Shown one piece after another: positions 1,533 through 54,396 of a stretch of DNA of 64,000 bases. The notes beneath the pieces were generated by a model that had not been told where the DNA came from, did no database searches, and worked only from the letters and a program-made list of their open reading frames with translations. Every line of letters begins with the position of its first letter. Positions within the stretch are counted from its first letter, which is position 1. The position numbers and the translations under genes were made by a program. The stretch covers positions 1 to 64,000 of IMG/VR virus record IMGVR_UViG_3300021964_009390; one strand, 5' to 3'.

Positions 1533-1536
1533 TTAT

Positions 1537-1845: not shown

Positions 1846-1849
1846 TTAC

Positions 1850-2281: not shown

Positions 2282-2316
2282 TAGTATTTTCCGTTCTCGG
2301 ACTAAATACTCGTATT

Positions 2317-2988: not shown

Positions 2989-2998
2989 ATAATTAGTA

Positions 2999-3163: not shown

Positions 3164-3164
3164 T

Positions 3165-4091
3165 ATGAGCACTGAAAACCAAAAATTCCAAGAGATGTTA
3201 AAAGAGGTCACCAAGGATATCTTGAGTGAAGACAGCCTGTCTCAAATCCAAGAAGCTTTTGACTCTGCAGTACAAGAGCGAGTTGACCTGCATGTAGAAA
3301 AAGCTTTAGTTGAACAGGACGACCAGTACGCTGGAAAGCTAGAAAAGCTACTTGAAGCTATTGATAACGACCATTGTAACAAATTAGAGCAACTAGTTGA
3401 AGCTATTGACACCAACCACGCTCAAAAATTACAACTTATAGTCAACAAGTATAAAACGGCTTTGAACGAAGAAGCAGTTGAATTGAAAGAAAGTCTTATA
3501 GACAACATAAGTAACTATTTAGAATTGTATGTAGAAAAGTCATTACCTATGGAACATATACAGGAAGCTGTGAACAACAAACGCGCTCGTAGTGTGCTCG
3601 GTGAGTTGCGTCAGGTACTAGCAGTTGACGGTGTGTTGGGTAAACAATCAATTGCAAACGCAATCGCGGACGGTAAGCATCAAATAGACGAGTCTACTGC
3701 GATCGCTCGGAAAAAAGCTAAAGAAAACAAATTACTCAAAGAAAATTTAGACCGTGCTCAAGCAGAGTTAATATTAGAAAGAAAGTCTGTTGGTTTACCG
3801 GAGCGTAAAAAAGAATATGTACGCCGAGTGTTAGATGGGAAGTCCGCGGAGTTCATCACGGAAAACTTTGATTACACGCTGCAGTTATTTGAAAAAGACG
3901 ATATAAATGCTAGAAACAGTTTGAGAGAACAAGCTAAACAGTCTCGAGCAGTCAGTAAAAAGAATGTAGATGTTATAGTTGAGAACAAACAACCAGAACA
4001 AGCACCAATACAAGAGAGTGCTAGCAATTTAGATGATACTGCTAATGACCCGATGTTCAACACGTACATGGGGGAACTTGGTAAGTATTAA
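3165..4091 (+). CDS. Prohead scaffolding protein (T4 gp22-like)
   Basis: Acidic, coiled-coil-like protein between protease and capsid genes; C-terminus MFNTYMGELGKY. Confidence 0.85.
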   Translation: MSTENQKFQEMLKEVTKDILSEDSLSQIQEAFDSAVQERVDLHVEKALVEQDDQYAGKLEKLLEAIDNDHCNKLEQLVEAIDTNHAQKLQLIVNKYKTALNEEAVELKESLIDNISNYLELYVEKSLPMEHIQEAVNNKRARSVLGELRQVLAVDGVLGKQSIANAIADGKHQIDESTAIARKKAKENKLLKENLDRAQAELILERKSVGLPERKKEYVRRVLDGKSAEFITENFDYTLQLFEKDDINARNSLREQAKQSRAVSKKNVDVIVENKQPEQAPIQESASNLDDTANDPMFNTYMGELGKY

Positions 4092-4149: not shown

Positions 4150-5706
4150 ATGTCAAAAGTTATTAAACCAACTCAAGCTTATATCGATGAAAGTCGCGCA
4201 AGGGTGTTGCTCGAGAAGTGGGGTCCAGTACTCGACTACAACTCAGCAAATGTAGCACCTATTGAAGATGATCATACACGTCTCAACACAGCCATGCTTT
4301 TGGAAAACCAAGAGTCTTGGTGTTTGAATGAGGCCAATGTAGCAGGTGGAACTGGTGCAGTATTCGGCGGTCCTTCCGCTGGTGCCGGTGCACAAGGTGG
4401 AGTCTTCCCAGGTTCTGGGGACACTGCTTATGCACAAGGTGACGCACGTCTGCCAAAGATCCTCATCCCGATGATTCGTCGTACATTCCCAGAGTTGTTG
4501 ACTAATGAATTAGTAGGTGTTCAGCCAATGAGCGGTCCTGTAGGGCTCGCTTTTGCTTTGCGTTACAAGTACAGCGACACAATGCTTGGAGAGACTAACA
4601 ACAACGGTAAAGACGGAAGTCTTGGATCCGGAGTGTCAGGTCCTGCAGGTACAGACGCGTACAGTGCCGCGGCCGGAAATGCCGGTCCTGGTGGTCGTAA
4701 TGTTCCGGGCAACCTCAATGGTAGCCCAGTCGCTGGTGAACTTGGATATCAATATCTTGATACCCGCTTCACTGGTAAGAGCAGCGCGGCTCTTCAAGGT
4801 TCAGATATCTCCCAAACTTCTGGTACATTCGGGCTCAGCCCCGGGAAAGGTACCGTCAATTGGGACGCATTGAATCAGGACGCTGGTGTAGCAGCTCTCT
4901 TGGGTGAATTCGAATTAGGAAGTAACATTCCTACAATCGAGGTCAGTTTCGAGAAAACAGCTGTTGAAGCCGGAACACGTAGGCTTGCTGCCAACTGGAG
5001 TGTGGAACTCGAACAAGACTTGAAGAACATGAACGGTATCGACATTGATACTGAGCTCACCAACGCGATGAGCTACGAGCTTCAAGCCGAAATCGATCGT
5101 GAGATGATTGTTCGTATGATCCAAACAGCACTTCAAGGAGGAATCGGCAAAGGCTACAGTGCATGGTTTGCTGAAACCGCTGATGGACGTTGGATGGCAG
5201 AACGTAACCGTGACCTTTACGCAAAACTCATCGTTGAAGCAAATCGTATAGCGATCCGCAACCGTCGTGGTGCAGCAAACTTTATTGTTGCTAGCCCGTC
5301 CGTTTGCGCGATACTAGAGATGCTTCCTGAGTTTACATGGATGCCTGTCAATGGTTCCGTCAACACACAACCTGTTGGCGTTGCTAAGGTAGGTAACCTA
5401 GGCGGAAGGTTCAACGTTTACAGAGACACCCGTACTGAGGCTCAAAAGGAACAAGGTTTACGTTCCAATCAAGTCGAGTACGCACTCTTAGGATACAAGG
5501 GACCAGAGTTTTATGATACTGGTATCATATACTGCCCTTACATCCCTGTGATGGTTCAACGCACTATTGGCCCTAACGACTTCAGTCCACGTGTTGGACT
5601 ACTCACCCGTTACGGTGTTGTAGACAACATTTTTGGTGCTGAGTTGTACTACCATGTAGTACTAGTCGGTGGGCTCAAGGGTGGTTTGTCAACAGGACAC
5701 CTCTGA
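4150..5706 (+). CDS. Major capsid protein (T4 gp23-like)
   Basis: LLEKWGPVLD, MLLENQE, ILIPMIRRTFP..GVQPMSGPVGLAFALR, WSVELEQDLK and GIIYCPYIP..GLLTRYG motifs; AAGGAG upstream. Confidence 0.97.
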   Translation: MSKVIKPTQAYIDESRARVLLEKWGPVLDYNSANVAPIEDDHTRLNTAMLLENQESWCLNEANVAGGTGAVFGGPSAGAGAQGGVFPGSGDTAYAQGDARLPKILIPMIRRTFPELLTNELVGVQPMSGPVGLAFALRYKYSDTMLGETNNNGKDGSLGSGVSGPAGTDAYSAAAGNAGPGGRNVPGNLNGSPVAGELGYQYLDTRFTGKSSAALQGSDISQTSGTFGLSPGKGTVNWDALNQDAGVAALLGEFELGSNIPTIEVSFEKTAVEAGTRRLAANWSVELEQDLKNMNGIDIDTELTNAMSYELQAEIDREMIVRMIQTALQGGIGKGYSAWFAETADGRWMAERNRDLYAKLIVEANRIAIRNRRGAANFIVASPSVCAILEMLPEFTWMPVNGSVNTQPVGVAKVGNLGGRFNVYRDTRTEAQKEQGLRSNQVEYALLGYKGPEFYDTGIIYCPYIPVMVQRTIGPNDFSPRVGLLTRYGVVDNIFGAELYYHVVLVGGLKGGLSTGHL

Positions 5707-5756: not shown

Positions 5757-5789
5757 ACACCGGTCTTAACCGACCGGTGTTTCTTTTTG
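5757..5789 (+). terminator. Intrinsic terminator after the major capsid gene, probably bidirectional
   Basis: Stem ACACCGGTC/GACCGGTGT with a 6-nt loop, followed by TTCTTTTT. The clpC stop codon lies in the loop. A second hairpin TAGAGCGT/ACGCTCTA sits at 5719-5747. Confidence 0.85.
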
Positions 5790-8228
5790 TTCAATTACAA
5801 TCTCGTCGTCATGTAGCTTGATTACTACATCAGTTGTCCGCTCATTTTTTAAAATGTATTTAGCGAGTGGAGTCTGTATATGTGTTTGTATAGCACGTCT
5901 CAACGGCCTGGCCCCGAATTTGCTATCAAACCCTCGATCAACTAACATATTCCTCACCGGCCTGGTGATTTCTAAGTTGATCTGTTTCATATTCATACGG
6001 GTTATAAATTTTTTCAACTCACTATTCAAAATCTTTTTACATACATCCAATGTGAGACTGTTAAACATTACAATTTCATCCAACCGGTTTAAAAATTCCG
6101 GACGTAGATATTGCTGCAATTGTTTCTTCACATTGTCTAAATTATCCTGTTCATTAGAACCAAACCCTACTACATGATTTTTCTGCATCCGATCCGCACC
6201 GATATTAGACGTCATTAAAATGATACAATTTCTAAAATTAATAGTCACTCCTCGGCTATCAGTCAACTGCCCCTCATCTAACAATTGCAACAACAACTGC
6301 ATCACATCCGGATGTGCTTTTTCTATCTCATCAAACAATACAACACTGTATGGATTGTACCGTATTTGCTCGGTAAGTTGCCCACCCTCACCGTAACCAA
6401 CATAACCCGGAGGACTGCCAATCAATTTGCTGACAGAATGTGATTCCATTAATTCGCTCATGTCCACACGAATCATATTATCCATGTCCCCGTATATATG
6501 TTCCGCTAGTTGTTTGGCTAGATATGTTTTACCCACACCTGTAGGTCCCATCAACAAGAATGACCCAACAGGTTTACCCGGTTCATTGACATCAGTACGA
6601 CCACGTATCACACTGTCGCAAATTAAATTTACTGCTTGCTGTTGCCCTATCACCTTTTTATTAATGGTTCTTTCTAGCGACAGCAGCTTTTTACTCTCGC
6701 TACGTTTCAAATGCTGCAACGGGACCCCGCACCAGTTGCTTACTGTTTTACGTATATCTTCTTCTGTTATGGTAGTGGTTTTCTGATTATTTTTCACCCG
6801 TTCTAATGCATTGTATTTTTTCTTACGTAATCGCTTCTCCGCTTCTCTGTATGTTGCAGCTGCGATATAATCATCTTTATCTAGAAACTCATGAATCAAC
6901 TGTACGCTGTCCTGAATTTTTTCATCTATAGACAATACCGACTTGGGTATCTTACCCTTAGCTAATTTGACACGAGCTGCACATTCATCTAGTACATCTA
7001 TCGCTTTGTCTGGAAAAAATCTATCTGATATGTACCGTTCACTCAAACTAACAGCCGCTTCTATCGCATCCGGTGTGAACTCTACACTATGAAAGTCTTC
7101 ATATTTATATTTCAACCCATCTAGTATGTCTATAACCATATCATATTCCGGTTCATCTACAACAATTTTTTGAAATCTACGCTCAAGAGCACCATCACTT
7201 TCTATAAACTCTCTGTATTCATCAAATGTAGTTGTACCGATACAGCAAATACCACCTCTACTTAACGCAGGTTTTAAAATATTGGCGGCATCCATAGCAC
7301 CGTCCGCGTTACCAGCTCCAACTAACATATGGATCTCATCAATAAACACAATAGCGTTGTCAATATTGAGTAAATCATCCATGACCTGTTTCATACGCTC
7401 TTCAAACTGTCCGCGGAATTTTGTACCAGCCACCATCAAAGACAAATCTAGATTGTATATGTTTTTGTCTTTCAATTGTACCGGTACTAGATCGGAGGCA
7501 ATCAAATTGCACAAACCTTCTACAACAGCAGTCTTCCCCACTCCCGGTTCACCTACTAGCACCGGGTTGTTCTTTTGCCGGCGGACTAGAACTTGCATAA
7601 CGCGTTCAATTTCCGAGTCTCTACCAATCACAGGATCTAGCTCCCCTTGTTTGGCAAGTTCTGTCATGTTGCTGCTGAACATACGCAAAGCTTCACCTGG
7701 TGCCACAGTTGTTTCTTCCCCTCCGGTACCAACATTTTGCTCTTCGTTTTTTGTACCCCCGTTTTCGATTTGTGGATTTAAATAAGCCCGTAGGCTTTGT
7801 GCTAATTCCGGAAGATCTACACTATGTTCATATAGAAAATTAAAAGCTGGGCATTCTGTATGACATACAACCCCTAGAAATATATGCTCGGTACCTATAA
7901 ATGAATGGTCCATTTTGATACTAATGTTCCTGGCGATTTGCAACACCTTGTCAACATCATCAGAAGCGGGGATCTTTATTTTAGCTTCTAGTTTAGGATC
8001 CACTTTTTTGATGTCTAAATTGTCTAGGTAATGATCCAAACGCTCGATTAACCGCGATACATCCACCCGCTGTTCGTTTGCTAGTATGTCACATATGTAA
8101 CTGCCTTGTGTGTTTAGTGTAGCATACAACAGATGTAATGTGTTGATCTCACCATGGTTATATTTCTTGGCTGTGATTTGAGCTGCCGCTAATAAATCGC
8201 TAGCGCGAGGTGTAAAATTATACATCAT
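5766..8228 (-). CDS. clpC: ClpC/ClpA-type AAA+ unfoldase (ClpP partner)
   Basis: Double Clp-N domain, two Walker A motifs (GEPGVGKT, GPTGVGKT), pore loops GTKFRG and GYVGY, short UVR-like middle domain, VGF ClpP-docking tripeptide. Confidence 0.92.
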   Translation of the reverse strand: MMYNFTPRASDLLAAAQITAKKYNHGEINTLHLLYATLNTQGSYICDILANEQRVDVSRLIERLDHYLDNLDIKKVDPKLEAKIKIPASDDVDKVLQIARNISIKMDHSFIGTEHIFLGVVCHTECPAFNFLYEHSVDLPELAQSLRAYLNPQIENGGTKNEEQNVGTGGEETTVAPGEALRMFSSNMTELAKQGELDPVIGRDSEIERVMQVLVRRQKNNPVLVGEPGVGKTAVVEGLCNLIASDLVPVQLKDKNIYNLDLSLMVAGTKFRGQFEERMKQVMDDLLNIDNAIVFIDEIHMLVGAGNADGAMDAANILKPALSRGGICCIGTTTFDEYREFIESDGALERRFQKIVVDEPEYDMVIDILDGLKYKYEDFHSVEFTPDAIEAAVSLSERYISDRFFPDKAIDVLDECAARVKLAKGKIPKSVLSIDEKIQDSVQLIHEFLDKDDYIAAATYREAEKRLRKKKYNALERVKNNQKTTTITEEDIRKTVSNWCGVPLQHLKRSESKKLLSLERTINKKVIGQQQAVNLICDSVIRGRTDVNEPGKPVGSFLLMGPTGVGKTYLAKQLAEHIYGDMDNMIRVDMSELMESHSVSKLIGSPPGYVGYGEGGQLTEQIRYNPYSVVLFDEIEKAHPDVMQLLLQLLDEGQLTDSRGVTINFRNCIILMTSNIGADRMQKNHVVGFGSNEQDNLDNVKKQLQQYLRPEFLNRLDEIVMFNSLTLDVCKKILNSELKKFITRMNMKQINLEITRPVRNMLVDRGFDSKFGARPLRRAIQTHIQTPLAKYILKNERTTDVVIKLHDDEIVIEQKETPVG

Positions 8229-11079: not shown

Positions 11080-11637
11080 ATGTTAATTAGTTTCACAGGT
11101 GCGCAAAGTACTGGTAAGAGTACACTATTAGAACGTATGGTGAGTGATGTAAAATTTAGAAAATGTTCATTCATCAAAGAAGTTACACGTAAAGTTGCCC
11201 GGCAAGGAGTGAATATAAATGACTCTGGTGACAATATAACTCAGCTATTGATATTATCAGAGCATATAAACAATCATATCATGCGCGGTTGCACGGTTTT
11301 AGATCGGTGCATAGTAGATGGCTTGATATATACTGAATGGTTGTATAATGAAGGCAAAGTAGACAAATGGGTATATGAATATGCTGTCAACTTACACAAC
11401 GCATTATTACCTAAACTAGACATTATATTTTATACAAACCCAGCAGATGTACCATTAGTAAACGATGGTCAGAGGAGCGTGAACAAAGAATTTAGGGAGG
11501 GTATAATACGGCTATACAACGAATATTACGAGTGTAACACTATAGCTAGAGACAAGACTGTAACATTATCAGGCACAGTTGATCAAAGATACAAAACCAT
11601 TACAAACACTTTAAAAAATCATGACACAACTAGATAA
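11080..11637 (+). CDS. P-loop nucleotide monophosphate kinase-like protein (AAA_28/NadR-like)
   Basis: ISFTGAQSTGKSTL Walker A and VLDRCIVD motif. Confidence 0.8.
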   Translation: MLISFTGAQSTGKSTLLERMVSDVKFRKCSFIKEVTRKVARQGVNINDSGDNITQLLILSEHINNHIMRGCTVLDRCIVDGLIYTEWLYNEGKVDKWVYEYAVNLHNALLPKLDIIFYTNPADVPLVNDGQRSVNKEFREGIIRLYNEYYECNTIARDKTVTLSGTVDQRYKTITNTLKNHDTTR

Positions 11638-12535
11638 TTCACATATTAGCAAAGTGCTGGGACAAACTGTTGATTACCCAGATCAATATGACCCTACTAT
11701 ACTGGTCAGAGAACCAAGGATCAACAATAGGCAACACTTGGATATACACGATGACAACCTACCTTTTGTAGGTTACGACACATGGAACGCGTACGAAGTA
11801 AGTACTCTGACTACAAAGGGTCTCCCGGTGACTGGAGTATTGAAAATAGTATATCCTTGTGATAGTAAATACATAGTAGAGAGCAAAAGCATCAAACTGT
11901 ATTTGAACTCATTCAATATGTTCAACTGCGGAGACACTAGACAACAGTCAATAACAAATCTAGTGAATGCGGTTAGACGGGATTTGGGTGAATTGCTACA
12001 AACCACTGTACAAGCTGAGTTTATTGATGACAATAATAGGACCAACCCAGAACCAGTGTTTGGTGAAATGTATCATTACAGTAGTTTAGAGTATGACCTG
12101 GTACCAGGAGATACGATTGACGATAGCGACTTCACTATATACGAGGAAACCCCGGGAATATTGAAGAGTCATAATGTGACACAGAGTGTACAAGTATTTA
12201 AATCTGGATTGTTGAAGAGCAATTGCCGTGTGACTAGCCAACCTGACTGGGGAGATGTATTTGTTTACATACTAGGTAACAAACACGTTACATATGAAAG
12301 TATGTTGGAGTACATTGTTTCGTTTAGAAATGAATGTCATTTCCATGAAGAAATATGCGAGACAATTTACAAGAGATTGTCCACATTACTATCACCGGAC
12401 GAATTGTGTGTTACATGCTTGTATGCGAGAAGGGGTGGCATAGATATAAATCCAACCAGAGCGTCACACGAACATTTACTACCACAGAATTTGATAGACC
12501 CTAAAATAGAGCACTGTAAAACACAAAAACAGTAG
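11621..12535 (+). CDS. queF: NADPH-dependent 7-cyano-7-deazaguanine reductase, long (type II) form
   Basis: IVESKSIKLYLNSFN, LKSNCRVTSQPDWG (catalytic Cys and Asp), FHEEICE, RRGGIDINPTR. Confidence 0.93.
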   Translation: MTQLDNSHISKVLGQTVDYPDQYDPTILVREPRINNRQHLDIHDDNLPFVGYDTWNAYEVSTLTTKGLPVTGVLKIVYPCDSKYIVESKSIKLYLNSFNMFNCGDTRQQSITNLVNAVRRDLGELLQTTVQAEFIDDNNRTNPEPVFGEMYHYSSLEYDLVPGDTIDDSDFTIYEETPGILKSHNVTQSVQVFKSGLLKSNCRVTSQPDWGDVFVYILGNKHVTYESMLEYIVSFRNECHFHEEICETIYKRLSTLLSPDELCVTCLYARRGGIDINPTRASHEHLLPQNLIDPKIEHCKTQKQ

Positions 12536-14487: not shown

Positions 14488-14857
14488 TGACAGTGGCTGA
14501 ACTGTTTCGTAAAGGAGATGTAAAAGAATGTGTAGACACTTTAGTAGCCTTGCATCGTAGACATTATCACCACCCCGGTTACACGTTGAACAGCCGGTTG
14601 GTAAGAGAAAAATACACCGACAAATTCAACAATATCGCCTCCATGTCTGGAAAGTCTGAAGATACAATCACGATAAAATATGACGAAAACAGCAGTACAT
14701 ATCGTTTAAAATTTAAAAATCAATTGATTAGAGAGTTGAACATACAAGACAAACAGTTAGGTTCCGCTACTATAAATCATCATGAAACGGCACTGTCTGA
14801 TGAACAAATCATAACAGAAATTTTATTTGAAACTACATATTACACGCTATAAAGGTG

Positions 14858-14886
14858 TTGATATCACATGAAAAATAAACTATATA
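14858..14886 (+). promoter_or_regulatory. Sigma70-like promoter for the prkA operon
   Basis: TTGATA-17 nt-TATATA; the ATG follows 6 nt after the -10 box with no Shine-Dalgarno. Confidence 0.55.
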
Positions 14887-14892
14887 TATTAT

Positions 14893-16959
14893 ATGAGCCA
14901 ACAAGACATTTATAATTTATCCGACCTATTAACATCTACTGCATCAGAAACTGATTATGGTGCCTTGAATTGGACTGGTACTTTTGACGAATACCTGGAC
15001 ATAGTGAATGAAACTCCAAAAGTAACTAGGAACTCATATCAGCGTATGTATGACATGGTAATGTCCCATGGTACAGAGGAAGTCAATTACTGTAAACAAA
15101 CATATACAAAATATAAATTTTTCGCTAGCGGTAAGGATGGTGACATAAGTATTTACGGTTTGGAAGAACCGTTGATGGAACTTGTAGATGTATTGAGATC
15201 CGCTGCGTATCACTATGGACCAGAGCGCAGAATCATATTGCTGCACGGTCCAGTAGGTAGTAGCAAATCGACGATAGTAACCACATTGAAAAAGGGATTA
15301 GAACAATATTCAATCACCGATCCATTGTATTCATTCACCTGGTGTGTGGAAGATGATAATGGTACACCAGTTGAAGTTCCATGCCCCATGAATGAAGAGC
15401 CATTGAAATTGTTACCGGAAGCCGCTAGGAAGAACATTGTTGAACGTATCAACAATTCACTAGCCAACGATGATTATAGAATCAAACTAGATGGCAATTT
15501 GTCACCAGTGTCCGAGTTTTACAGAGATAAGTTGCTGAAAAAATATAACGGTGATTTTAACAAAGTACTATCACACGTCAAAGTGAGACGTGTTATATTG
15601 TCTGAAAAATCAAGAGTAGGTATAGGAACATTTCAACCGAAAGATGAAAAGAGTCAAGATGCTACTGAATTAACAGGCGACATAAACTACAGAAAGCTAG
15701 CTCAATATGGTAGTGAGAGTGACCCACGTGCTTTTGACTTTGATGGTGAATTTTTGATATCAAACAGAGGCATGGTTGAGTTTCAAGAGATCCTCAAATT
15801 GCAAACAGAGTTTTTGTACGACCTCTTGGGAGCCACGCAAGAGCATCGAGTCAAGCCTAAACGATTCAATCAAGTACCGATAGATGAAGTGATTATAGGT
15901 CACACCAACAACGCAGAATATGACAAGCTGAAAAACAATAAGTTCATGGAGGCTCTACGTGACAGAACCATAAAAATAGATGTACCGTACTTACTGAAAA
16001 TAAATGATGAGAAAAAAATATACGATTATTTCTACAATCAACACACGGTACACAAACACATCGCACCACATACTACATATCTTGCTGCGCTGTATGCAGT
16101 AGTGTCACGTCTAGAAAAACCGGTCAAGAATGACATGAGTATAATCCAAAAAGCAAAATTGTACAACGGAGTTGGTGTACATGGTTTCACAGAAGAACAT
16201 GTCAAGGAGATGTTAGAAGAGACACCTAACGAAGGTTTGTTGTCTGGTGTGAGTGCGCGTTTCATACAGAATCAATTTAGTAACGCTATTGTGAACCCTA
16301 GGATGGGTAAAAAAAGTATCAATCCTTTCATGCTGTTCTCGCAAATACGAGACGGTATCAAAAATTATTCCGGTTTCAACAGCGAGGATCTGCGCGCTGA
16401 AGCGTTAGAAAGATTGGAACTAGTCGAGAAAGAATATGACCGTATAGTGAAAAGAGAGGTACAACAAGCGCTCAGCAGTAGTGAAGAGGCCATCAAAACG
16501 TTGTGTACAAATTATATTGACAACGTTGTTGCTTTTGTAAACGATGAAAAGGTGACCAACCCCATTACTGGTAAAGATGAACCGGCTAATGAAAAGATGA
16601 TGAGATCTATTGAGGAAAAAATAAATGTCTCTACCAATATGAAAGAAGATTTCCGTCGTGAGATCATGAATTATATGGGTTCACTGGCAGCAAAAGGTAA
16701 GTCATTTAAATACGATAGTAACGAGCAATTGCATAAAGCCCTAGAAAAGAAGTTGTTTGAAGATATTAAAGACAGTATCAAACTATCCGCGCTGGCACAA
16801 GACACGGCCACTGTGGTAGACAAGGAGTTACTTGATAAAATCAACGCACTCAAGCAACGACTGGTGAAAGACTTTGGGTATGATGAAGATAGTGCTCATG
16901 ATGTTCTCGTGTATGTGGGGAGTATATTTGCCCGAGGTGACGACGTAGGAGACAAGTAA
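14893..16959 (+). CDS. prkA: PrkA/YeaG family AAA+ serine kinase
   Basis: LLHGPVGSSKST, GELxGDIN..L..YGSESDPRAFDFDGEF..SNRGMVEFQEILK, EALRDR, SGVSARF. Confidence 0.93.
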   Translation: MSQQDIYNLSDLLTSTASETDYGALNWTGTFDEYLDIVNETPKVTRNSYQRMYDMVMSHGTEEVNYCKQTYTKYKFFASGKDGDISIYGLEEPLMELVDVLRSAAYHYGPERRIILLHGPVGSSKSTIVTTLKKGLEQYSITDPLYSFTWCVEDDNGTPVEVPCPMNEEPLKLLPEAARKNIVERINNSLANDDYRIKLDGNLSPVSEFYRDKLLKKYNGDFNKVLSHVKVRRVILSEKSRVGIGTFQPKDEKSQDATELTGDINYRKLAQYGSESDPRAFDFDGEFLISNRGMVEFQEILKLQTEFLYDLLGATQEHRVKPKRFNQVPIDEVIIGHTNNAEYDKLKNNKFMEALRDRTIKIDVPYLLKINDEKKIYDYFYNQHTVHKHIAPHTTYLAALYAVVSRLEKPVKNDMSIIQKAKLYNGVGVHGFTEEHVKEMLEETPNEGLLSGVSARFIQNQFSNAIVNPRMGKKSINPFMLFSQIRDGIKNYSGFNSEDLRAEALERLELVEKEYDRIVKREVQQALSSSEEAIKTLCTNYIDNVVAFVNDEKVTNPITGKDEPANEKMMRSIEEKINVSTNMKEDFRREIMNYMGSLAAKGKSFKYDSNEQLHKALEKKLFEDIKDSIKLSALAQDTATVVDKELLDKINALKQRLVKDFGYDEDSAHDVLVYVGSIFARGDDVGDK

Positions 16960-18083
16960 TGCCCGGTCGCCGGATACGAGAAGATCACAGTGAATATCGT
17001 GATCTAATCAAAGACAAAGTAAAAAGCCGAGTCAAAGATCATATCAAAACCGGTAAAAAAGTCAAACGTCATGGGAAAGACTTGGTTGTTGTAGATATAC
17101 CTGTTATAGATCTACCGTCATTCCGCCATGGGAAAAGTAAATCTGATGGTGGTGTAGGTAACGGTCCAGTGGATGTAGGGGACGAAGTAGGTGATGGTCC
17201 ACAACAACCCGGAAAGGGTCAAGCTGGTGATCAACAAGCGGAGCATACAATGGGTGTAGGTGTTACTGTCGAAGACTATATTGATGTACTAGGTGATGAA
17301 CTAGAATTACCACGTCTAGTACCTAAACTGAGAGGTGATATAATAAATCAAAAGGTCAAATATAACGGTATTAGTCGAGTTGGTAACAATTGTCTGCTAC
17401 ATAAAAAGAAGACATTGAAAAATGCAATGAAACGCGTGATGTCTACCGGGTTATATAATCCTGACAATATATCTAATGTGTACCCAATAACACAAGACAA
17501 GGTATATAAAACATGGAACGTTGTTGACTCACCGGACATAAACGCAGTAGTATTTTTTTTACAGGATATAAGCTGGAGTATGGATGGTGAGAAAAGAGAT
17601 CTAGTAAGAGAACTATGCTGGTATCTGGAACAATGGATAAGAAAATTTTACAATCAAGTCGATTTAAAACATATTGTACACGATGTAGTGGCTCAAGAAG
17701 TTGATCAAGAAAAATTTTACAGTTTTGAAGCTGGAGGTGGTACCAAGATAAGCTCCGCCTTCGAATTGACGTCGGATATTATAGATAGTTCCTACCCGGC
17801 CGAGGATTGGAACATGTATGTCTTTTATTTCTCCGATGGTGAAAATTTTTCAAATGACACTAAGAGATGTATACAGTTATTAGAACAATTGCAAACCAAA
17901 TGCAATTTGATAGGGGTTGGAGAAGTCAAAGGTGTTACGGATTGGGCCGATTTCGCGCTATCAATAGAAGAGGAAATAGACAATAAAGTCCTAGACGAGG
18001 GTGTTATAACCACAAGCTCGATCGATTCACATGATGATGTGTTACGCGCAATTCAAGAATTTTTATCACCGGTTTCACGATGA
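16959..18083 (+). CDS. yeaH: YeaH/YhbH (DUF444) vWA-domain protein
   Basis: Gly-rich linker, MIDAS-like DISWS, GGTKISSA, YFSDGEN; translationally coupled to prkA. Confidence 0.9.
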   Translation: MPGRRIREDHSEYRDLIKDKVKSRVKDHIKTGKKVKRHGKDLVVVDIPVIDLPSFRHGKSKSDGGVGNGPVDVGDEVGDGPQQPGKGQAGDQQAEHTMGVGVTVEDYIDVLGDELELPRLVPKLRGDIINQKVKYNGISRVGNNCLLHKKKTLKNAMKRVMSTGLYNPDNISNVYPITQDKVYKTWNVVDSPDINAVVFFLQDISWSMDGEKRDLVRELCWYLEQWIRKFYNQVDLKHIVHDVVAQEVDQEKFYSFEAGGGTKISSAFELTSDIIDSSYPAEDWNMYVFYFSDGENFSNDTKRCIQLLEQLQTKCNLIGVGEVKGVTDWADFALSIEEEIDNKVLDEGVITTSSIDSHDDVLRAIQEFLSPVSR

Positions 18084-19690
18084 GACGTACAACATCTAGC
18101 AATTTATTACAACAGGGTGTAGGTACCGAGCTAGCCAAGCAAATCCCGGAGATCATTGATGTATGTAAAAAGGAAGGATTGGACCCATACGAACTGGTTA
18201 TTGAAGAATATACTGCTGACGAGATTGCGGAACTAGGAGCCTATGGTGGGTTCCCCGTGAGATACCCACACTTTTCATTTGGTCAGCAATACGAAACATT
18301 ACACCACCAGTATCACAGTGGTATGGGTAAGATATATGAAATGGTTGTGAATAACGATCCTACATACATGTATTTGCAGCGAAACAATCCAATAGTGGAC
18401 AATTTGACAGTTGTCGCTCATGCATTAGCACATTCTGATTTTTTTAAAAATAATATATACTTTGGTAACACCAACCGAAACATGATGAATGTGATGGCTA
18501 ACCATGGTCAAAAAATCCGGCAGTATATGAATATATACGGTAAATCTCGAGTGTCTAAATTTTTAGATGCCTGTTTGTCTGTCGATGATTTAATAGACCC
18601 GAACATTGTGTGGTCGGATCAACAATATAACAAACCTACAATAACGGAATTTGCACCACCGATAGAACAATTCACTCCGAAGCGTATAGGTACCAATCAT
18701 TACATGGACCATTATGTGAATACAGCCAAATTTTTAGAGAAGCAGCATAAATCACATTTGAGACAAAAAGCTCGCGCAGACAGTAAATATCCTTTGAAAC
18801 CAGTGAAAGACATACTGTTGTTCATACTACAACATGTCCGAATGGAACGCTGGCAGCAAAACATATTATCCATGGTACGTGACGAGAGCATCTATTTCCG
18901 TCCGCAAATGTTGACAAAAGTGTTAAACGAAGGTTGGGCTAGTTACTGGGATAGTTACATCATGACCAAATGTGGTTACGCAGGTGATGAAGGTATAATA
19001 CAATACGCGCAACACCATTCAGGGGTGTTAGGTGGTAAATATGCAATGAGTAACCCGTACAGATTGGGTAACTGTTTGCTCCGTCATGTGGAGGATCGAT
19101 GGAACAAAGGGCAGTTCGGCCGGGCATGGGACAACTGTGATGACGAATTCAAAAGAAAATCATGGGACACTAAAGCTAGTCAAGGTCGCGACAAAATATT
19201 TGAAGTTCGTCGCGATTATAATGACGTTAATTTTATAAACGAATTTTTTACACCGGAATTTTGTGACGAGCATGAATATTTTGAATACCAATTGGACCCG
19301 GAAACAAACAAATACGTGGTTGTGAGCAAGGATTATGACAAAATTAAATCTAAATTGCTGCAACGTTACACGAATGGTGGTCGCCCTAGTATAGTGCTCA
19401 CAAATTTTGACAAGTCTGGTATAGAATTGAGACATCGGTATGAAGGCATGGAACTAGAGAGTAATTATGTTGAAAGTACCATGAAGATGTTGTATAATAT
19501 TATAAATATGCCAATTGTATTGAAATCCAAAGCGTATGTATCTAAAAAGAAAAAGGTATATGGTGCAGTGTTTGCTGTCGCGGAAGAGGAAGAAGAACTA
19601 TGTGGTCGTGTGTTTAAATATGATGGTAAGACGTTCAAGTCATGGGAAGACTACAAACAACGTGACTTTCCCAACTACCAAATTACATGA
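18080..19690 (+). CDS. spoVR: SpoVR/YcgB family protein
   Basis: GGFPVRYPHFSFG, IYEMVVNNDP, AHALAHSDFFKNN, TKVLNEGWASYW, NPYRLG. Confidence 0.93.
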   Translation: MRRTTSSNLLQQGVGTELAKQIPEIIDVCKKEGLDPYELVIEEYTADEIAELGAYGGFPVRYPHFSFGQQYETLHHQYHSGMGKIYEMVVNNDPTYMYLQRNNPIVDNLTVVAHALAHSDFFKNNIYFGNTNRNMMNVMANHGQKIRQYMNIYGKSRVSKFLDACLSVDDLIDPNIVWSDQQYNKPTITEFAPPIEQFTPKRIGTNHYMDHYVNTAKFLEKQHKSHLRQKARADSKYPLKPVKDILLFILQHVRMERWQQNILSMVRDESIYFRPQMLTKVLNEGWASYWDSYIMTKCGYAGDEGIIQYAQHHSGVLGGKYAMSNPYRLGNCLLRHVEDRWNKGQFGRAWDNCDDEFKRKSWDTKASQGRDKIFEVRRDYNDVNFINEFFTPEFCDEHEYFEYQLDPETNKYVVVSKDYDKIKSKLLQRYTNGGRPSIVLTNFDKSGIELRHRYEGMELESNYVESTMKMLYNIINMPIVLKSKAYVSKKKKVYGAVFAVAEEEEELCGRVFKYDGKTFKSWEDYKQRDFPNYQIT

Positions 19691-20535
19691 CCAAATCAGT
19701 TTATATAATTGGTGAGATAGGTATAAATCATAATGGTGACCTAGACATAGCCAAACGATTGATAGATATAGCTAGTTGCGCTGGGTTTGATGCGGTGAAG
19801 TTTCAGAAGAGGACACCGGATGTGTGTGTGCCCGACGCGCAAAAAAACGTTACTAGATCCACACCATGGGGTGACATGCCCTATATAGAGTATAAAAAAA
19901 GACTAGAATTTGGTAAACGTGAGTATAACAAAATCTCATCATATTGCCACGAAAAGGGTATAGACTGGTCCGCTAGTCCATGGGATTTAGACAGCGCTGA
20001 ATTTTTGTCACAATACAAACTACCATGGGTGAAAATTGCTAGCGCTAGTATGACGAATTTAGAGTTGTTACGCTACTGCGCCATCACATTTGACAAGATA
20101 ATACTTAGCACTGGTATGTGTACATATGAGCAAATAATAACTGCTGTTAAAAACTGCAAGAGGTACACAGACATATCAAACATAACACTGCTACACTGTA
20201 ACAGCAGTTACCCCACACCTGTCGATGAAATAAATTTAAATGTTATACATACATACAAAACAGATCCACAGCTTAAAGGTGTGTCTATAGGTTACAGTGG
20301 TCATGAATATGGACTAACAACCACAATAGCTACTACAGCTATGGGCGTTAGTTGTATAGAGAGGCACATCACTTTAGACAAAGGAATGTGGGGTAGTGAC
20401 CAACAATGCTCGTTAGAACCACATGCTATGTTCAAACTGGTACGTGGTATCAGAGAGTTAGAATCAGCAATGGGTAGCTATGATAAGTGTATAACTCCTA
20501 GTGAGCAGGAGAAAATAAAAACGTTGAGAGGTTAA
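19687..20535 (+). CDS. neuB: N-acetylneuraminate (nonulosonate) synthase, short form without the antifreeze-like domain
   Basis: IGEIGINHNGD, DAVKFQKR, LLHCNSSYP, GYSGHE, IERHITLD..WGSD. Confidence 0.92.
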   Translation: MTKSVYIIGEIGINHNGDLDIAKRLIDIASCAGFDAVKFQKRTPDVCVPDAQKNVTRSTPWGDMPYIEYKKRLEFGKREYNKISSYCHEKGIDWSASPWDLDSAEFLSQYKLPWVKIASASMTNLELLRYCAITFDKIILSTGMCTYEQIITAVKNCKRYTDISNITLLHCNSSYPTPVDEINLNVIHTYKTDPQLKGVSIGYSGHEYGLTTTIATTAMGVSCIERHITLDKGMWGSDQQCSLEPHAMFKLVRGIRELESAMGSYDKCITPSEQEKIKTLRG

Positions 20536-21308
20536 TGATACACGCTATAACATATTGCTCTAACCAGTATACTAAGCGCGCATGTTGGATATCTAAACAG
20601 TTCGAAGCCACTAATTATATAGATACATACAAGTGCTATACCCAGGCTGACCTGTCAACTAATTATATGGGGGAATTTCCAAGCAAATGGTTTTCAACAA
20701 CGAGTAAAGGTGGTGGATGGTGGGTATGGAAACCGTACATTATCAAGCATGCCATTGAACAAATCGACCGGAATGATGTGCTTATGTATATAGATTGTGG
20801 ATGTACGTTGAATAATACACCGGCTGCAACTGACCGGTTCAGTCAATATATTAATGCAATTGACGAATCAACAAGCAAGATGCTATTATTCGAGTTGCCC
20901 GAGTGTGTTGAAAAGGACTGGACTAATATGCACTGTATAAATACACTGAAGCAAAAGTATAATATAACAGATCAACGTATGAACGAATATATAAATAAAC
21001 CTCAACATGCTGCAACTACAACTATAATGAAACCTAGCGAGTTTACATACAATTTATGTGACGAATGGTTGAAGGTAGCAGTATATAAAAACGGTATATT
21101 ATTTTCTGAACAACATACACTTTCTGGTGAACGTCACCGGCATGATCAGTCATGTTTAAGCATGTTATACAAAATATATCAAGGGGATATAAGTATATCA
21201 AACGAAACATGGTTCGGTTCTCGAGGTTTCGGAACTAAAAAATCATTAAAGTATCCGATTTGGTCTACTAGACTTACCAAATACCACCCTAGGTTTGACA
21301 CCGCTTGA
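20535..21308 (+). CDS. Putative glycosyltransferase
   Basis: GGWWVWKPYII, MYIDCGC and RHRHDQSCLS motifs typical of viral GT-A-like proteins. Confidence 0.55.
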   Translation: MIHAITYCSNQYTKRACWISKQFEATNYIDTYKCYTQADLSTNYMGEFPSKWFSTTSKGGGWWVWKPYIIKHAIEQIDRNDVLMYIDCGCTLNNTPAATDRFSQYINAIDESTSKMLLFELPECVEKDWTNMHCINTLKQKYNITDQRMNEYINKPQHAATTTIMKPSEFTYNLCDEWLKVAVYKNGILFSEQHTLSGERHRHDQSCLSMLYKIYQGDISISNETWFGSRGFGTKKSLKYPIWSTRLTKYHPRFDTA

Positions 21309-21542: not shown

Positions 21543-21881
21543 ATGACAGTATGTTTTGACTTGGATGGTACAATATGCCATACCGATGAAACCCTTCCCA
21601 TACCCGAGAGATACTATCAATCAACTGTCGAACCGGTGATAAGAGATGTAATTCAAAGAATGTATCAACGTGGTCATACTATTATTATAGACACCGCTCG
21701 TGCTAGTTCTGCAACCGGTTTGAATAAATATTGGAAAAGGTACAGGATGAAATTAGTCACAATGAAACAACTAAAAGAATGGAAGGTTCCATACCACCGG
21801 TTGAGAGTGGGTGTGAAATTCCCGGCGGACTTATATATAGATGACAAAGCCACAACACCTGGAGTTTTTGAAAACAGATAG
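21543..21881 (+). CDS. HAD-family phosphatase (capsule-biosynthesis phosphatase-like)
   Basis: FDLDGTIC, TAR, KFPADLYIDDKA. Confidence 0.8.
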   Translation: MTVCFDLDGTICHTDETLPIPERYYQSTVEPVIRDVIQRMYQRGHTIIIDTARASSATGLNKYWKRYRMKLVTMKQLKEWKVPYHRLRVGVKFPADLYIDDKATTPGVFENR

Positions 21882-21888
21882 AGGTACA

Positions 21889-22548
21889 ATGAGCTTGAAA
21901 AATATTATTATACCGGCTCGAGCCGGTAGCAAAGGCTGGGTGCGCAAAAATTTGAAACTATTCACCCATACAGCGGATTCAATACCTGTACAATACCGAT
22001 CACGTGTGATTGTGTCTACAGACGATCTACAAATAGCTGCATTGAGTGAAGACGCCGGGTTCACTGTGCATAATAGGTCCGAAGAAACATCACAAGATGT
22101 ATCAGACACAAAATCAACAGTCACAGAAGTAATTGACAGTCTAGAGACTACACCTACTGACTTATTTGTCATGTTGTATCTAACATACCCAACAAGAACA
22201 TGGGACGATGTACAAGGTATGTACAACAAGTTCGTCTCAACAAAATGTTCTAGTATGCTGTGTCGACAACCAGTGAAAACACATCCGTACTTGGTGATGT
22301 ACCCGGGGGATCAAGACACTGGTGAACTGGTAATAAATCATCGAGCGTATCAACGACAGCAGTATCCTGAATGTTTTGAGATATCTCATTATATGTGCAT
22401 GTTTAGAGCTGGTGAGTTACCAAAATTAGGCCGGAACATGTACAACAAAAACACAAAATACTACCCGATCGAACGAGTTATCGATGTAGATAGCGAAACA
22501 GACTACAAAAATTTTACAAACATATATGAATCTGAAAATAGTAATTGA
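21889..22548 (+). CDS. neuA: CMP-nonulosonate synthetase (cytidylyltransferase)
   Basis: IIPARAGSKG..RKN, VSTDD, LYLTYPTR, IDVD. Confidence 0.88.
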   Translation: MSLKNIIIPARAGSKGWVRKNLKLFTHTADSIPVQYRSRVIVSTDDLQIAALSEDAGFTVHNRSEETSQDVSDTKSTVTEVIDSLETTPTDLFVMLYLTYPTRTWDDVQGMYNKFVSTKCSSMLCRQPVKTHPYLVMYPGDQDTGELVINHRAYQRQQYPECFEISHYMCMFRAGELPKLGRNMYNKNTKYYPIERVIDVDSETDYKNFTNIYESENSN

Positions 22549-54383: not shown

Positions 54384-54396
54384 AATAAATATATGT

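What the first reader, a model, noticed from the sequence alone, without database searches (positions are those of the whole stretch)
14893..19690. Intact prkA(yeaG)-yeaH-spoVR(ycgB) operon on a phage
Seen: three full-length, translationally coupled genes (4.8 kb) behind a sigma70-like promoter. Known: this conserved trio acts in nitrogen-starvation and stationary-phase adaptation in E. coli and in sporulation in Bacillus, and its mechanism is unresolved. Inference: the phage manipulates host dormancy or starvation state early in infection.
Basis: partly seen in the sequence, partly recalled or inferred. Interest (0 to 1): 0.7.

Follow-up and report, generated by a model that had tools for sequence, protein, structure and literature searches.

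The report
Phage-borne PrkA–YeaH–SpoVR starvation operon
A 222-kb marine T4-like phage carries an intact, strongly selected copy of the bacterial PrkA(YeaG)–YeaH–SpoVR starvation module. The copy belongs to a virus-only lineage shared with other giant phages and probably lets the phage turn on bulk protein recycling in its host, though that function is untested.

Summary
ORFs 14893-16959, 16959-18083 and 18080-19690 are full-length PrkA, YeaH/DUF444 and SpoVR, overlapping by 1 and 4 nt. They lie in a 222,461-bp virus record with a gp23-type head gene.

It is not host contamination. Depth is flat across the junction (19.1 vs 19.9), the flanks are syntenic in two relatives, and GC matches the surroundings.

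It is not neutral. dN/dS is 0.007-0.078 in close phage pairs, and 34 of 40 listed strain differences are synonymous.

IMG/VR holds 63 viral contigs with a PrkA relative; 56 of the 62 fetched in that scan carry the whole trio. In all three gene trees the bacteria fall on one side of a branch. In the PrkA tree 30 of 32 viral rows form a virus-only clade. Ralstonia phage RsoM2USA and Thermus phage phiYS40 carry more distant copies, so the trio on phages is already on record.

A sigma70-type promoter sits 6 nt before the ATG. It is conserved in 27 of 28 relatives and shares its class with the phage's polymerase, helicase, RNR and SSB genes. Early or middle expression is therefore likely.

Best mechanism (inferred): starvation-type ATP-dependent bulk proteolysis that feeds phage production.

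The parts
14858..14886 (+). Sigma70-type promoter of the operon: -35 TTGATA (14858-14863), 17-nt spacer, -10 TATATA (14881-14886). The ATG lies 6 nt downstream, so the mRNA is probably leaderless or nearly so.
   Evidence: Sequence read. The same arrangement occurs in 27 of 28 non-redundant relatives, although the upstream genes differ. It belongs to a genome-wide class of 42 of 286 gene starts, mostly 5-8 nt before the ATG. No Shine-Dalgarno sequence precedes it.
14893..16959 (+). prkA (yeaG/spdA family), 688 aa: an N-terminal AAA+ domain and a C-terminal PrkA kinase-like domain.
   Evidence: PF08298 scores 294.5 bits and PF06798 scores 238.8 bits. PDB 9xip 'Serine protein kinase' matches at E 2.5e-212 over residues 21-681. 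Walker A is GPVGSSKST with K125. T261 corresponds to B. subtilis T217. The pore-loop Y272-G273 sits in the YGSESDPR context (PMC9512850, PMC13001217). dN against L091 is 0.062, the lowest of 10 genes compared.
16959..18083 (+). yeaH/yhbH (DUF444), 374 aa: an N-terminal helix, a disordered Gly-rich linker and a C-terminal vWA domain with a complete MIDAS site.
   Evidence: PF04285 scores 231.9 bits. D203, S205, S207, T262 and D293 are invariant across 31 phage and bacterial sequences. The model has pLDDT 75. Foldseek matches vWA domains (BatB, CMG2, Rea1-MIDAS, Rpn10, NorD) from E 3.7e-7.
18080..19690 (+). spoVR/ycgB, 536 aa: a helical N-terminal body (about residues 1-400) that resembles zincin metallopeptidases, plus a C-terminal alpha/beta domain.
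   Evidence: PF04293 scores 363.3 bits. The model has pLDDT 78. It matches the AFDB models of B. subtilis SpoVR (TM 0.69/0.79) and E. coli YcgB (TM 0.62/0.65). H64, E87, H114, H118, D120, H142, E269 and N283-E-G-W286 are invariant. With VIA-align, most named hits among the top 38 are zincin peptidases, Z 5.7-9.7.
19687..21308 (+). Downstream genes coupled to the trio: a NeuB-family sugar synthase (19687-20535) and an unnamed ORF (20535-21308). They are not part of the module but probably lie on the same transcript.
   Evidence: The overlaps are 4 nt and 1 nt. PF03102 scores 244.1 bits. In relative L009 about 1.5 kb separates spoVR from neuB. In L093 a DNA methyltransferase follows spoVR instead.

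Best explanation
This is a genuine, functional, phage-owned copy of the bacterial PrkA(YeaG/SpdA)-YeaH(YhbH)-SpoVR(YcgB) module. It belongs to an old lineage of the trio found only in viruses, shared by marine and estuarine T4-like jumbo phages and by huge phages of up to about 600 kb. The lineage is inherited as a three-gene block with its own promoter.

Shown: the identity and completeness of the three genes; phage ownership; strong purifying selection on all three; conservation of the ATP-binding, pore-loop and MIDAS residues and of a candidate metal site; and a conserved sigma70-type promoter placed for a leaderless mRNA.

Inferred, step 1: host RNA polymerase with its primary sigma factor transcribes the operon, together with the phage's replication and nucleotide genes and before the late genes.

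Inferred, step 2: PrkA forms an AAA+ ring that threads proteins through its pore. YeaH docks through its vWA/MIDAS domain as adaptor or activator, as in other AAA+/vWA pairs. SpoVR supplies a metal-dependent activity, possibly peptidase-like.

Inferred, step 3: the module switches the infected cell into starvation-type, largely non-specific ATP-dependent degradation of cytoplasmic proteins, without waiting for the host's RpoS-type signal. The freed amino acids and energy feed virion synthesis in nutrient-poor water. This would be the protein counterpart of host-DNA recycling by T4-like phages.
For: Identity.

Phage ownership:
- The record is a 222-kb virus with gp23, terminase, DNA polymerase and other phage hallmarks.
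- One 11,446-nt unitig joins the upstream phage genes to prkA at depth 19.1, and the next unitig has depth 19.9.
- Identical sequence turns up in further samples.
- L091 and L009 are syntenic on both sides.
- GC is 0.39-0.40, like the flanks.

Selection: omega is 0.007-0.078 for all three genes at dS 0.47-1.26. Of 40 listed strain differences, 34 are synonymous.

Lineage:
- 63 IMG/VR contigs carry a PrkA relative, and 56 of the 62 fetched in that scan have the full trio. Five of the other six are cut by a contig end just after prkA, and L147 shows no yeaH in its last 1.2 kb.
- In the PrkA tree the marine group and 18 of 20 huge-phage rows form a virus-only clade (SH-aLRT 99). The YeaH and SpoVR trees put the bacteria on one side of a branch (98 and 96).
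- The flanks differ between subclades while the block and its promoter persist.

Promoter class.

Function by homology:
- E. coli YeaG is required for starvation-induced bulk cytoplasmic proteolysis, which supplies amino acids and ATP (PMC13684143).
- B. subtilis PrkA degrades casein ATP-dependently, and Walker A K108 is needed (PMC9512850).
- PrkA is a clade III AAA+ protein with a pore-loop Y-G (PMC13001217).
- K125 and Y272-G273 are present here.
- The YeaH vWA domain resembles NorD, Rea1-MIDAS and Rpn10, which partner AAA+ rings.
Against: No experiment exists on any phage copy.

The E. coli result concerns YeaG, which is only about 27% identical to this protein (the YeaG equivalog model scores 213 against a cut-off of 576). 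That study did not test YeaH or YcgB.

B. anthracis PrkA showed negligible protease and kinase activity in vitro (PMC13001217), so PrkA may be a regulator rather than the protease itself.

SpoVR has HxxxH with Ala or Val where zincins have the catalytic Glu. Its fold matches are only Z 5.7-9.7, and Foldseek found nothing significant in the PDB.

The complex prediction for PrkA with YeaH gave no verdict.

The host is unknown, so it cannot be said whether it has its own trio or is amino-acid limited.

The early timing rests on promoter class only.
Confidence: 0.4

Rival explanations
1. Signalling or regulatory reading, the first reader's. PrkA acts as a Ser/Thr kinase or regulatory ATPase that reprograms the host's stationary-phase, nitrogen-starvation or dormancy circuitry. 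It would, for example, hold the cell in or out of a dormant state, rather than degrade proteins in bulk.
For: YeaG has been reported to autophosphorylate and to phosphorylate AceA (cited in PMC9512850). The C-terminal domain carries Hanks-kinase-like motifs (PMC13001217). YeaG matters in sustained nitrogen starvation (Figueira 2015, cited). The PDB depositors name 9xip 'Serine protein kinase'. Phage-encoded protein kinases that take over host functions are an established idea (T7 gp0.7; my own knowledge). The early or middle promoter class fits a takeover function.
Against: Two laboratories found no kinase activity or autophosphorylation for the Bacillus proteins (PMC9512850, PMC13001217). The kinase-like domain lacks a P-loop (PMC13001217). 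A kinase would not obviously need a vWA partner and a SpoVR partner, both kept under omega below 0.08. In E. coli the clearest phenotype is loss of bulk proteolysis (PMC13684143).
Confidence: 0.25
2. Targeted remodelling reading. The trio works as a MoxR-like AAA+/vWA chaperone, or as a selective protease acting on a few specific clients. Candidates are host sigma factors, hibernation or defence proteins, or a phage assembly or metal-cofactor step. It would not act on the proteome at large.
For: AAA+/vWA pairs such as NorQ-NorD, Rea1-MIDAS and Rpn10 act on specific clients, and YeaH's vWA domain resembles them. In B. subtilis the PrkA phenotype is specific to the sporulation regulators (PMC9512850). 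In relative L093 the trio lies next to a tape-measure-like gene and other large unnamed ORFs on one side and replication genes on the other. The phage also carries a ClpA/B-like AAA+ protein and a tmRNA, which hints at tailored proteostasis.
Against: The E. coli data point to largely non-specific turnover (PMC13684143). The module is a cellular one taken over whole, in two or more separate branches of the family, which argues for a generic host-side function rather than a phage-specific client. It is absent from most phages with similar virions (17 of 50,697 phage records).
Confidence: 0.2
3. Artefact or passenger reading. The region is host DNA mis-joined to a phage contig, or a recently captured gene block that drifts without function.
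For: The gene families are typically cellular. One phage record, Enterobacter phage LAU1, starts with YeaG and YeaH beside tail genes and looks like carried-over host DNA at a prophage end.
Against: Unitig depth is flat across the junction. The same flanks occur in L091 and L009. No bacterial species representative exceeds 56% identity, whereas viral relatives reach 72-90%. In the three gene trees the bacteria fall on one side of a branch, apart from the viral copies. Omega is 0.007-0.078. GC matches the phage.
Confidence: 0.01

Closest known systems
Bacterial PrkA(YeaG/SpdA)-YeaH(YhbH)-SpoVR(YcgB) stress and sporulation module
   Same: The three Pfam families and the gene order prkA-yeaH-spoVR match those of most of the 80 bacterial loci fetched. 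The genes are full length. Walker A, the pore loop, MIDAS and the SpoVR invariant residues are conserved. The folds match B. subtilis SpoVR and E. coli YcgB.
   Different: It is encoded by a lytic-type T4-like phage. It sits in a virus-only branch, 52-56% (PrkA), 33-41% (YeaH) and 38-46% (SpoVR) identical to the nearest bacteria. It falls below all NCBIfam equivalog cut-offs. It is driven by a constitutive-looking sigma70-type leaderless promoter rather than the RpoS, sigma-E or NtrC control described for the bacterial copies.
Already deposited phage copies: Thermus phages phiYS40/TMA/phiLo, Ralstonia phage RsoM2USA, and huge phages LR756511, LR756502, LR745206 and LR756504
   Same: These phages, mostly jumbo or huge, carry PrkA with YeaH and SpoVR. 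LR756511 belongs to the same virus-only clade.
   Different: phiYS40 is 32% identical, has the order yeaH-spoVR-X-prkA and sits on a very long branch. RsoM2USA and LR756502 carry the E. coli YeaG type (25-26% identical) and fall in a different branch of the family, next to an Enterobacter YeaG. None has been studied functionally. The RsoM2USA paper files SpoVR under 'replication' and PrkA under 'signal transduction' (PMC8504454).
PDB 9xip/9xiq/9xir, 'Serine protein kinase' (692 aa)
   Same: It belongs to the same roughly 690-aa PrkA subfamily. The alignment runs end to end at E 2.5e-212, with an almost identical Walker A (GPVGSAKST against GPVGSSKST) and the same pore-loop context.
   Different: The source organism and any publication are unknown to me. 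It carries no information on YeaH or SpoVR.
AAA+ ring with vWA/MIDAS partner systems (NorQ-NorD, Rea1-MIDAS, proteasomal Rpn10) and AAA+/zincin proteases (FtsH, YME1)
   Same: PrkA is a clade III AAA+ protein with a YME1-like pore loop (PMC13001217). YeaH has a vWA/MIDAS fold. SpoVR resembles the zincin fold. Together they could form a split machine working like FtsH, with a vWA receptor.
   Different: This is resemblance only. No complex is shown (one search gave no verdict). SpoVR lacks the HExxH glutamate. PrkA also has a kinase-like domain that those systems lack.
Host-takeover and auxiliary metabolic genes of marine T4-like phages (host-DNA recycling, PhoH, MazG and similar)
   Same: It is a cellular stress or starvation function carried by a marine myovirus. 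It sits in a block with other host-derived metabolic genes (QueF, NeuB).
   Different: The resource recycled would be protein rather than DNA, phosphate or carbon. I found no phage system described for bulk host proteolysis in the searched literature.

Membership tests
PrkA / YeaG (SpdA) family | N-terminal AAA_PrkA domain (PF08298) and C-terminal PrkA domain (PF06798), both above Pfam gathering scores | tested here: met
   294.5 and 238.8 bits against a cut-off of 25, covering residues 30-413 and 418-674.
PrkA / YeaG (SpdA) family | Walker A lysine needed for ATPase, protease activity and sporulation (B. subtilis K108), and pore-loop aromatic-Gly (B. anthracis Y228-G229) | tested here: met
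   GPVGSSKST with K125, and Y272-G273 in YGSESDPR. K125 and G273 are invariant in alignment A1; position 272 is Tyr here and Phe in most other rows (residues as defined in PMC9512850 and PMC13001217).
PrkA / YeaG (SpdA) family | Equivalog of E. coli YeaG (NCBIfam NF011999 / PRK15455 cut-off) | tested here: not met
   213 bits against a cut-off of 576, and about 27% identity to an Enterobacter YeaG. It belongs to the roughly 690-aa subfamily of PDB 9xip, not the YeaG subfamily.
PrkA / YeaG (SpdA) family | ATP-dependent protein degradation or kinase activity; requirement for starvation-induced proteolysis | not testable with these tools
   This needs biochemistry or genetics. The literature on the cellular proteins is itself divided (PMC9512850 against PMC13001217).
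YeaH / YhbH (DUF444) | DUF444 (PF04285) above the gathering score; C-terminal vWA fold with a complete MIDAS site (DxSxS...T...D) | tested here: met
   231.9 bits against 27. D203, S205, S207, T262 and D293 are invariant. Foldseek finds vWA hits from E 3.7e-7.
YeaH / YhbH (DUF444) | NCBIfam equivalog cut-offs (NF003711, TIGR02877 spore_yhbH) | tested here: not met
   355.4 against 388, and 239.3 against 468. It is close to the cut-off, but below it, for one of the non-sporulation models.
SpoVR / YcgB | SpoVR domain (PF04293) above the gathering score and the same fold as B. subtilis SpoVR and E. coli YcgB | tested here: met
   363.3 bits against 27. TM 0.69/0.79 to P37875 and 0.62/0.65 to P29013.
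SpoVR / YcgB | NCBIfam equivalog NF008737 (PRK11767) cut-off | tested here: not met
   157.4 against 679.
PrkA-YeaH-SpoVR operon as a system | The three genes adjacent, co-directional and in the order prkA-yeaH-spoVR | tested here: met
   Overlaps are 1 and 4 nt. The same order holds in most of the 80 bacterial loci fetched and in 56 of the 62 viral loci.
PrkA-YeaH-SpoVR operon as a system | Stress-responsive control (RpoS in E. coli, sigma-E in Bacillus, NtrC under nitrogen starvation) | tested here: inconclusive
   Only a sigma70-type element is seen, of the same class as the phage's replication genes. RpoS-type promoters cannot be told apart from sigma70-type promoters by sequence here.
Zincin (gluzincin-like) metallopeptidases, considered for SpoVR | HExxH on the active-site helix plus a third metal ligand downstream | tested here: not met
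   The motif is H114-[AV]-x-x-H118, with no Glu at position 115. H142 lies 24 residues later, and N283-E284 is invariant. The spacing is zincin-like but the catalytic Glu is absent.
Zincin (gluzincin-like) metallopeptidases, considered for SpoVR | Zincin fold (mixed sheet, then active-site helix, then helical subdomain) | tested here: inconclusive
   With VIA-align, most named hits among the top 38 are M1, M3, M4, M9, M30, M32 or M61 peptidases, at Z 5.7-9.7. That range can arise by chance for helical models. Foldseek against the PDB gave nothing below E 0.3, and the AFDB clusters returned only SpoVR families.
Phage auxiliary / host-takeover gene | Cellular-type gene resident in phage genomes, maintained by selection, expressed from a phage promoter | tested here: met
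   The bacteria fall on one side of a branch in the three gene trees. Omega is 0.007-0.078. The promoter is conserved. Expression itself has only one weak RNA contig behind it.

The most novel reading that the evidence does not exclude
PrkA, YeaH and SpoVR together form a self-contained three-part proteolytic machine: an AAA+ unfoldase ring, a vWA/MIDAS receptor and a non-canonical zincin-like hydrolase. It would work like a split FtsH or proteasome. Giant phages have kept their own lineage of it for a long time, to liquidate the host proteome into amino acids and energy soon after infection. Bulk host-protein recycling would then be a general strategy of large phages in nutrient-poor habitats, parallel to host-DNA recycling. 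The phage versions, stripped of host regulation, would be the simplest handle for solving the mechanism of the trio.
Probability: 0.25. Interest if true: 0.85.

Novelty: new member of a known kind. Interest (0 to 1): 0.58.

Why it matters
The PrkA/YeaG-YeaH-SpoVR trio is one of the most widespread bacterial modules whose mechanism is still poorly understood. In 2026 YeaG was tied to a global starvation-induced proteolysis programme in E. coli.

This work finds the whole trio in a virus-only lineage. The lineage is under strong purifying selection and carries its own conserved promoter. It is spread over dozens of jumbo and huge phage genomes from marine, estuarine and other samples.

That pattern suggests large phages deliberately trigger this programme. 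If so, it adds protein recycling to the list of host resources that phages mobilise, with consequences for burst size and nutrient flow in oligotrophic waters.

It also offers compact, regulation-free versions of the three proteins for biochemical and structural work. The co-inheritance of all three genes in phages is independent evidence that they act together.

Tried and rejected
- blastn of the 4.8 kb against 50,697 phage records gave no match. Only protein-level searches found relatives.
- The generic sigma70 and terminator scan gave hit counts at the chance level and missed the real site because of its rule for the -10 hexamer. I replaced it with comparative and genome-wide tests.
- dN/dS of the window against its two nearest relatives (L091, L009) was unusable because dS is saturated. 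I used closer pairs within the clade and strain variants from reads instead.
- RNA evidence: the only metatranscriptome run that holds the sequence gave one 243-nt contig at depth 2.2 inside prkA, from a strain also present as DNA in the same study. DNA carry-over cannot be excluded, so this does not show transcription or timing.
- Complex prediction on PrkA with YeaH residues 96-374 gave no verdict (score 0.00). It is evidence neither for nor against binding.
- Foldseek of the SpoVR model against the PDB gave nothing significant. The AFDB clusters returned only SpoVR families. Pfam at E up to 10 showed no peptidase family. The zincin idea rests on VIA-align and motif position only.
- ClpP (PF00574) and SmpB (PF01668) are not encoded in the phage genome.
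- Host identification was not achieved. The nearest bacterial homologues are spread over four phyla at equal distance. No cultured phage has a major head protein more than about 34% identical. I briefly considered a Bacteroidota host because Shine-Dalgarno motifs are rare (24 of 286 ORFs). I dropped the idea because the early promoters are canonical TTGACA/TATAAT-like.
- One literature search, on phiYS40, was badly framed and returned nothing useful. One search was a mistyped reference.
- Searches for a paper describing 9xip, or a phage PrkA clade, found none in the library.

Full report
**What is there**

The window is the first 64 kb of a 222,461-bp IMG/VR virus record that CheckV rates as complete.

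Pfam assigns them end to end:
- the first to AAA_PrkA plus PrkA-C (294.5 and 238.8 bits);
- the second to DUF444/YeaH (231.9 bits);
- the third to SpoVR (363.3 bits).

The junctions are TAATG and ATGA. The coupling continues into a NeuB-family gene (19687) and a further ORF (20535).

All three proteins fall below the NCBIfam equivalog cut-offs. They are family members but not close orthologues of the E. coli or Bacillus proteins. PrkA belongs to the roughly 690-aa subfamily represented by PDB 9xip (E 2.5e-212).

**It is a phage, and the block belongs to it**

The record carries these phage genes:
- a gp23-type major head gene (4150-5706; phrog_138; about 33% identical to cyanomyophage gp23);
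- a terminase large subunit, a family-B-like DNA polymerase, a helicase, an RNR and a gp32-like SSB.

First, there is no coverage break. In two runs a single 11,446-nt unitig runs from 7 kb upstream into prkA at depth 19.1 (17.7 in the second run). The next unitig has depth 19.9 (18.5). Two other samples hold 100%-identical fragments. At least 14 estuarine or marine samples hold the sequence or a near relative. Two related contigs, L091 (PrkA 90% identical) and L009 (84%), share the genes on both sides. GC is 0.39-0.40, like the flanks.

Second, the genes are not neutral. Against L091, dN is 0.062, 0.079 and 0.128 with dS saturated. In closer pairs within the clade, omega is 0.027-0.073 (prkA), 0.007-0.078 (yeaH) and 0.024-0.051 (spoVR) at dS 0.47-1.26. 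Of 40 strain differences listed from DNA runs of another study, 34 are synonymous.

**A virus-only lineage**

The protein database shows about 80 clusters at 72-90% identity, on contigs of up to 290 kb. It then drops to about 55% for bacterial proteins.

IMG/VR holds 63 contigs with a PrkA relative. About 36 of them are 74-84% identical ('vir1'). About 27 are 41-52% identical ('vir2') and include contigs of 298-572 kb. Of the 62 loci fetched in that scan, 56 carry all three genes in the same order. Five of the other six stop at a contig end just after prkA, and L147 shows no yeaH in its remaining 1.2 kb.

The nearest bacterial species representatives are 52-56% identical. They are spread over Myxococcota, Bdellovibrionota, Planctomycetota and Chloroflexota, largely following phylum lines.

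In the PrkA tree, vir1 is monophyletic (SH-aLRT 100). Together with 18 of the 20 vir2 rows, including huge phage LR756511, it forms a virus-only clade (SH-aLRT 99). L152 joins that clade at 80, and L154 sits apart on a long branch. The YeaH and SpoVR trees give the same virus/bacteria split, with support 98 and 96.

These are 'quick' trees with long viral branches, so long-branch attraction between vir1 and vir2 is not excluded.

The trio's genomic neighbours differ between vir1 subclades:
- here it sits in a block with QueF and NeuB;
- in L093 it lies between a tape-measure-like gene with other large unnamed ORFs on one side and gp32-UvsX-exonuclease-DnaB-RNR on the other;
- in L003 and L008 it is next to homologues of genes that lie 90-140 kb away in this genome.

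The block therefore stays intact while it moves.

Other phages carry different versions of the trio. RsoM2USA and LR756502 carry the E. coli YeaG type and fall in a separate branch of the family. phiYS40 has a very divergent copy in a different gene order.

**Promoter and timing**

A consensus scan is uninformative, but comparison is not. The 40-bp gap before prkA holds TTGATA-17 nt-TATATA, followed 6 nt later by the ATG, with no Shine-Dalgarno sequence.

Of 28 non-redundant vir1 upstream regions, 27 have TTGAnn-N16-17-TAnnn[AT] in the same place, whatever gene lies upstream. Control windows show the pattern in 91 of 560 cases. In the commonest subclade the spacing puts the predicted transcription start on the ATG of a conserved MENKK N-terminus. 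That points to a leaderless mRNA.

Genome-wide, 42 of 286 gene starts have this pattern, against 3.9% of random 80-mers, and it mostly ends 5-8 nt before the start codon. The genes I annotated in this class are RNR, helicase, DNA polymerase, SSB, QueC, QueD, GTP cyclohydrolase, the ClpA/B-like gene and prkA.

A second upstream motif, NATAAATA(A/C)T, is 14-19-fold enriched and lies 11-14 nt before the ATG. It resembles the T4 late promoter. It precedes the terminase, ORFs of 1384, 871 and 1512 aa, and genes beside the head gene.

By analogy with T4-like phages (established knowledge), the trio belongs to the early or middle class that depends on the host's sigma factor. This is inference. The only RNA trace is one low-depth contig.

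**What the proteins look like**

PrkA:
- It keeps Walker A (K125, equivalent to B. subtilis K108, which is required for ATPase activity, protease activity and sporulation).
- It keeps the threonine equivalent to the regulatory phosphosite T217 (T261).
- It keeps the pore-loop Tyr-Gly that places PrkA in AAA+ clade III with FtsH and YME1.

YeaH:
- It has a helical N-terminus and a disordered Gly-rich linker.
- Its C-terminal vWA domain has all five MIDAS residues invariant.
- The fold matches BatB, CMG2, Rea1-MIDAS, Rpn10 and the NorD domain solved with NorQ. This is the kind of domain that partners AAA+ rings.

SpoVR:
- The model has pLDDT 78. It matches the models of B. subtilis SpoVR and E. 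coli YcgB.
- An exhaustive structural comparison brings up mostly zincin metallopeptidases, plus a few uncharacterised proteins, for residues 1-400 (Z 5.7-9.7).
- The invariant H114-x3-H118 lies on the long helix 105-124, after two strands, and H142 lies 24 residues on.
- The canonical Glu of HExxH is replaced by Ala or Val. Foldseek and the AFDB clusters give no support.
- I treat 'zincin-like metal site' as a lead, not a finding.

**Mechanism**

The literature on the cellular proteins gives these points:
- E. coli YeaG, renamed SpdA, is required for a starvation-induced, largely non-specific degradation of cytoplasmic proteins. That degradation supplies amino acids and ATP for new synthesis (PMC13684143).
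- B. subtilis PrkA degrades casein in an ATP-dependent way (PMC9512850).
- B. anthracis PrkA shows negligible protease or kinase activity alone (PMC13001217).

My best explanation has three steps. The phage expresses its own trio, free of host regulation, soon after infection. The trio turns on this bulk turnover. The host proteome is converted into building blocks and energy for a large virion in nutrient-poor water.

I put about 0.4 on this reading. I give about 0.01 to artefact or neutral passenger, and leave the rest open.

That the trio is a genuine, selected phage module I hold at above 0.95.

**Novelty**

The trio on phages has been on record since the phiYS40 genome and appears in the annotation tables for RsoM2USA (PMC8504454). 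The bare observation is therefore not new.

As far as the searchable literature shows, four points are new:
- the virus-only lineage across jumbo and huge phages;
- its inheritance as a block with a conserved leaderless sigma70-type promoter;
- the strength of selection on all three genes;
- the link to the newly described proteolysis programme.

I file it as a new member of a known kind, with a testable and potentially important functional hypothesis.

Noticed in passing
window 32277-32660 (+): The phage encodes its own tmRNA (Rfam RF00023, 90.3 bits against a cut-off of 47). ARAGORN predicts a long tag ending ...EQPALLAA. The 222-kb genome has no SmpB and no ClpP. With the ClpA/B-like gene and the trio, this gives the phage a noticeable proteostasis theme.
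   Followed up: partly
window 5766-8228 (-): An 820-aa double-AAA+ Clp-type protein (phrog_4871 'ATP-dependent protease', E 5e-244; Clp_N, two AAA domains and ClpB_D2-small in the L091 homologue). It lies right after the major head gene and is preceded by the same sigma70-type promoter class as prkA. I did not check whether it is ClpB-like or has a ClpP-docking loop.
   Followed up: no
whole genome G000; in the window, for example upstream of 1537, 1850, 2317, 12567, 23298, 27103, 29457(-) and 59790: The motif NATAAATA(A/C)T is 14-19-fold enriched upstream of gene starts. In about 60 genes it begins 11-14 nt before the ATG. It resembles the T4 and cyanophage late promoter TATAAATA but is unusually close to the start codon. 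It precedes the terminase and giant ORFs.
   Followed up: partly
whole genome G000: Only 24 of 286 ORFs have a Shine-Dalgarno-like core at -20..-4. Both promoter classes end 5-8 nt before the start codon, which suggests that leaderless or near-leaderless mRNAs are the rule in this phage. This may be a clue to the unknown host.
   Followed up: partly
window 11621-12535 (QueF); G000 147818-148525 (QueD-like), 152277-152921 (GTP cyclohydrolase), 171139-171849 (QueC-like): The phage carries a nearly complete 7-deazaguanine (preQ0/preQ1) pathway, presumably for DNA modification. The L091 homologues also show a dGTP diphosphohydrolase-like domain and a formyltransferase-like domain upstream of QueF.
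   Followed up: no
window 19687-20535 and 21841-22548; 53415-54614 (-): A NeuB-family nonulosonic-acid synthase is translationally coupled to spoVR. A CMP-sugar-synthetase-like gene (weak CTP_transf_3 hit in the L091 homologue) and a nucleotide-sugar epimerase are also present. Together they suggest phage-encoded sialic-acid-like sugar synthesis.
   Followed up: no
L091 9197-9952, compared with window 14852-14893: The closest relative has an extra 251-aa methyltransferase-like ORF inserted between the orf121 homologue and prkA. The TTGAAA-17-TATATA promoter is still immediately before prkA. This shows the promoter travels with the trio.
   Followed up: partly
L098 (Enterobacter phage LAU1, MN688132.1) 1-3308: This 30.8-kb record begins with genes annotated YeaG and YeaH, directly beside tail-fibre genes, and has no SpoVR. 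It looks like host chromosome carried at a prophage end rather than a phage-owned module.
   Followed up: no
window 18334-18530 and 18925-19121, in runs X6 and X8: Summed contig depth jumps to 57-70 and 20-28 against a background of 7-9 within spoVR. This probably reflects short conserved segments shared with co-occurring relatives.
   Followed up: no
vir2 loci, for example L134, L144, L148, L156 and L157: In many huge-phage relatives, 1-2 kb of extra sequence separates yeaH from spoVR, or prkA from yeaH, while the order is kept. I did not examine what is inserted.
   Followed up: no
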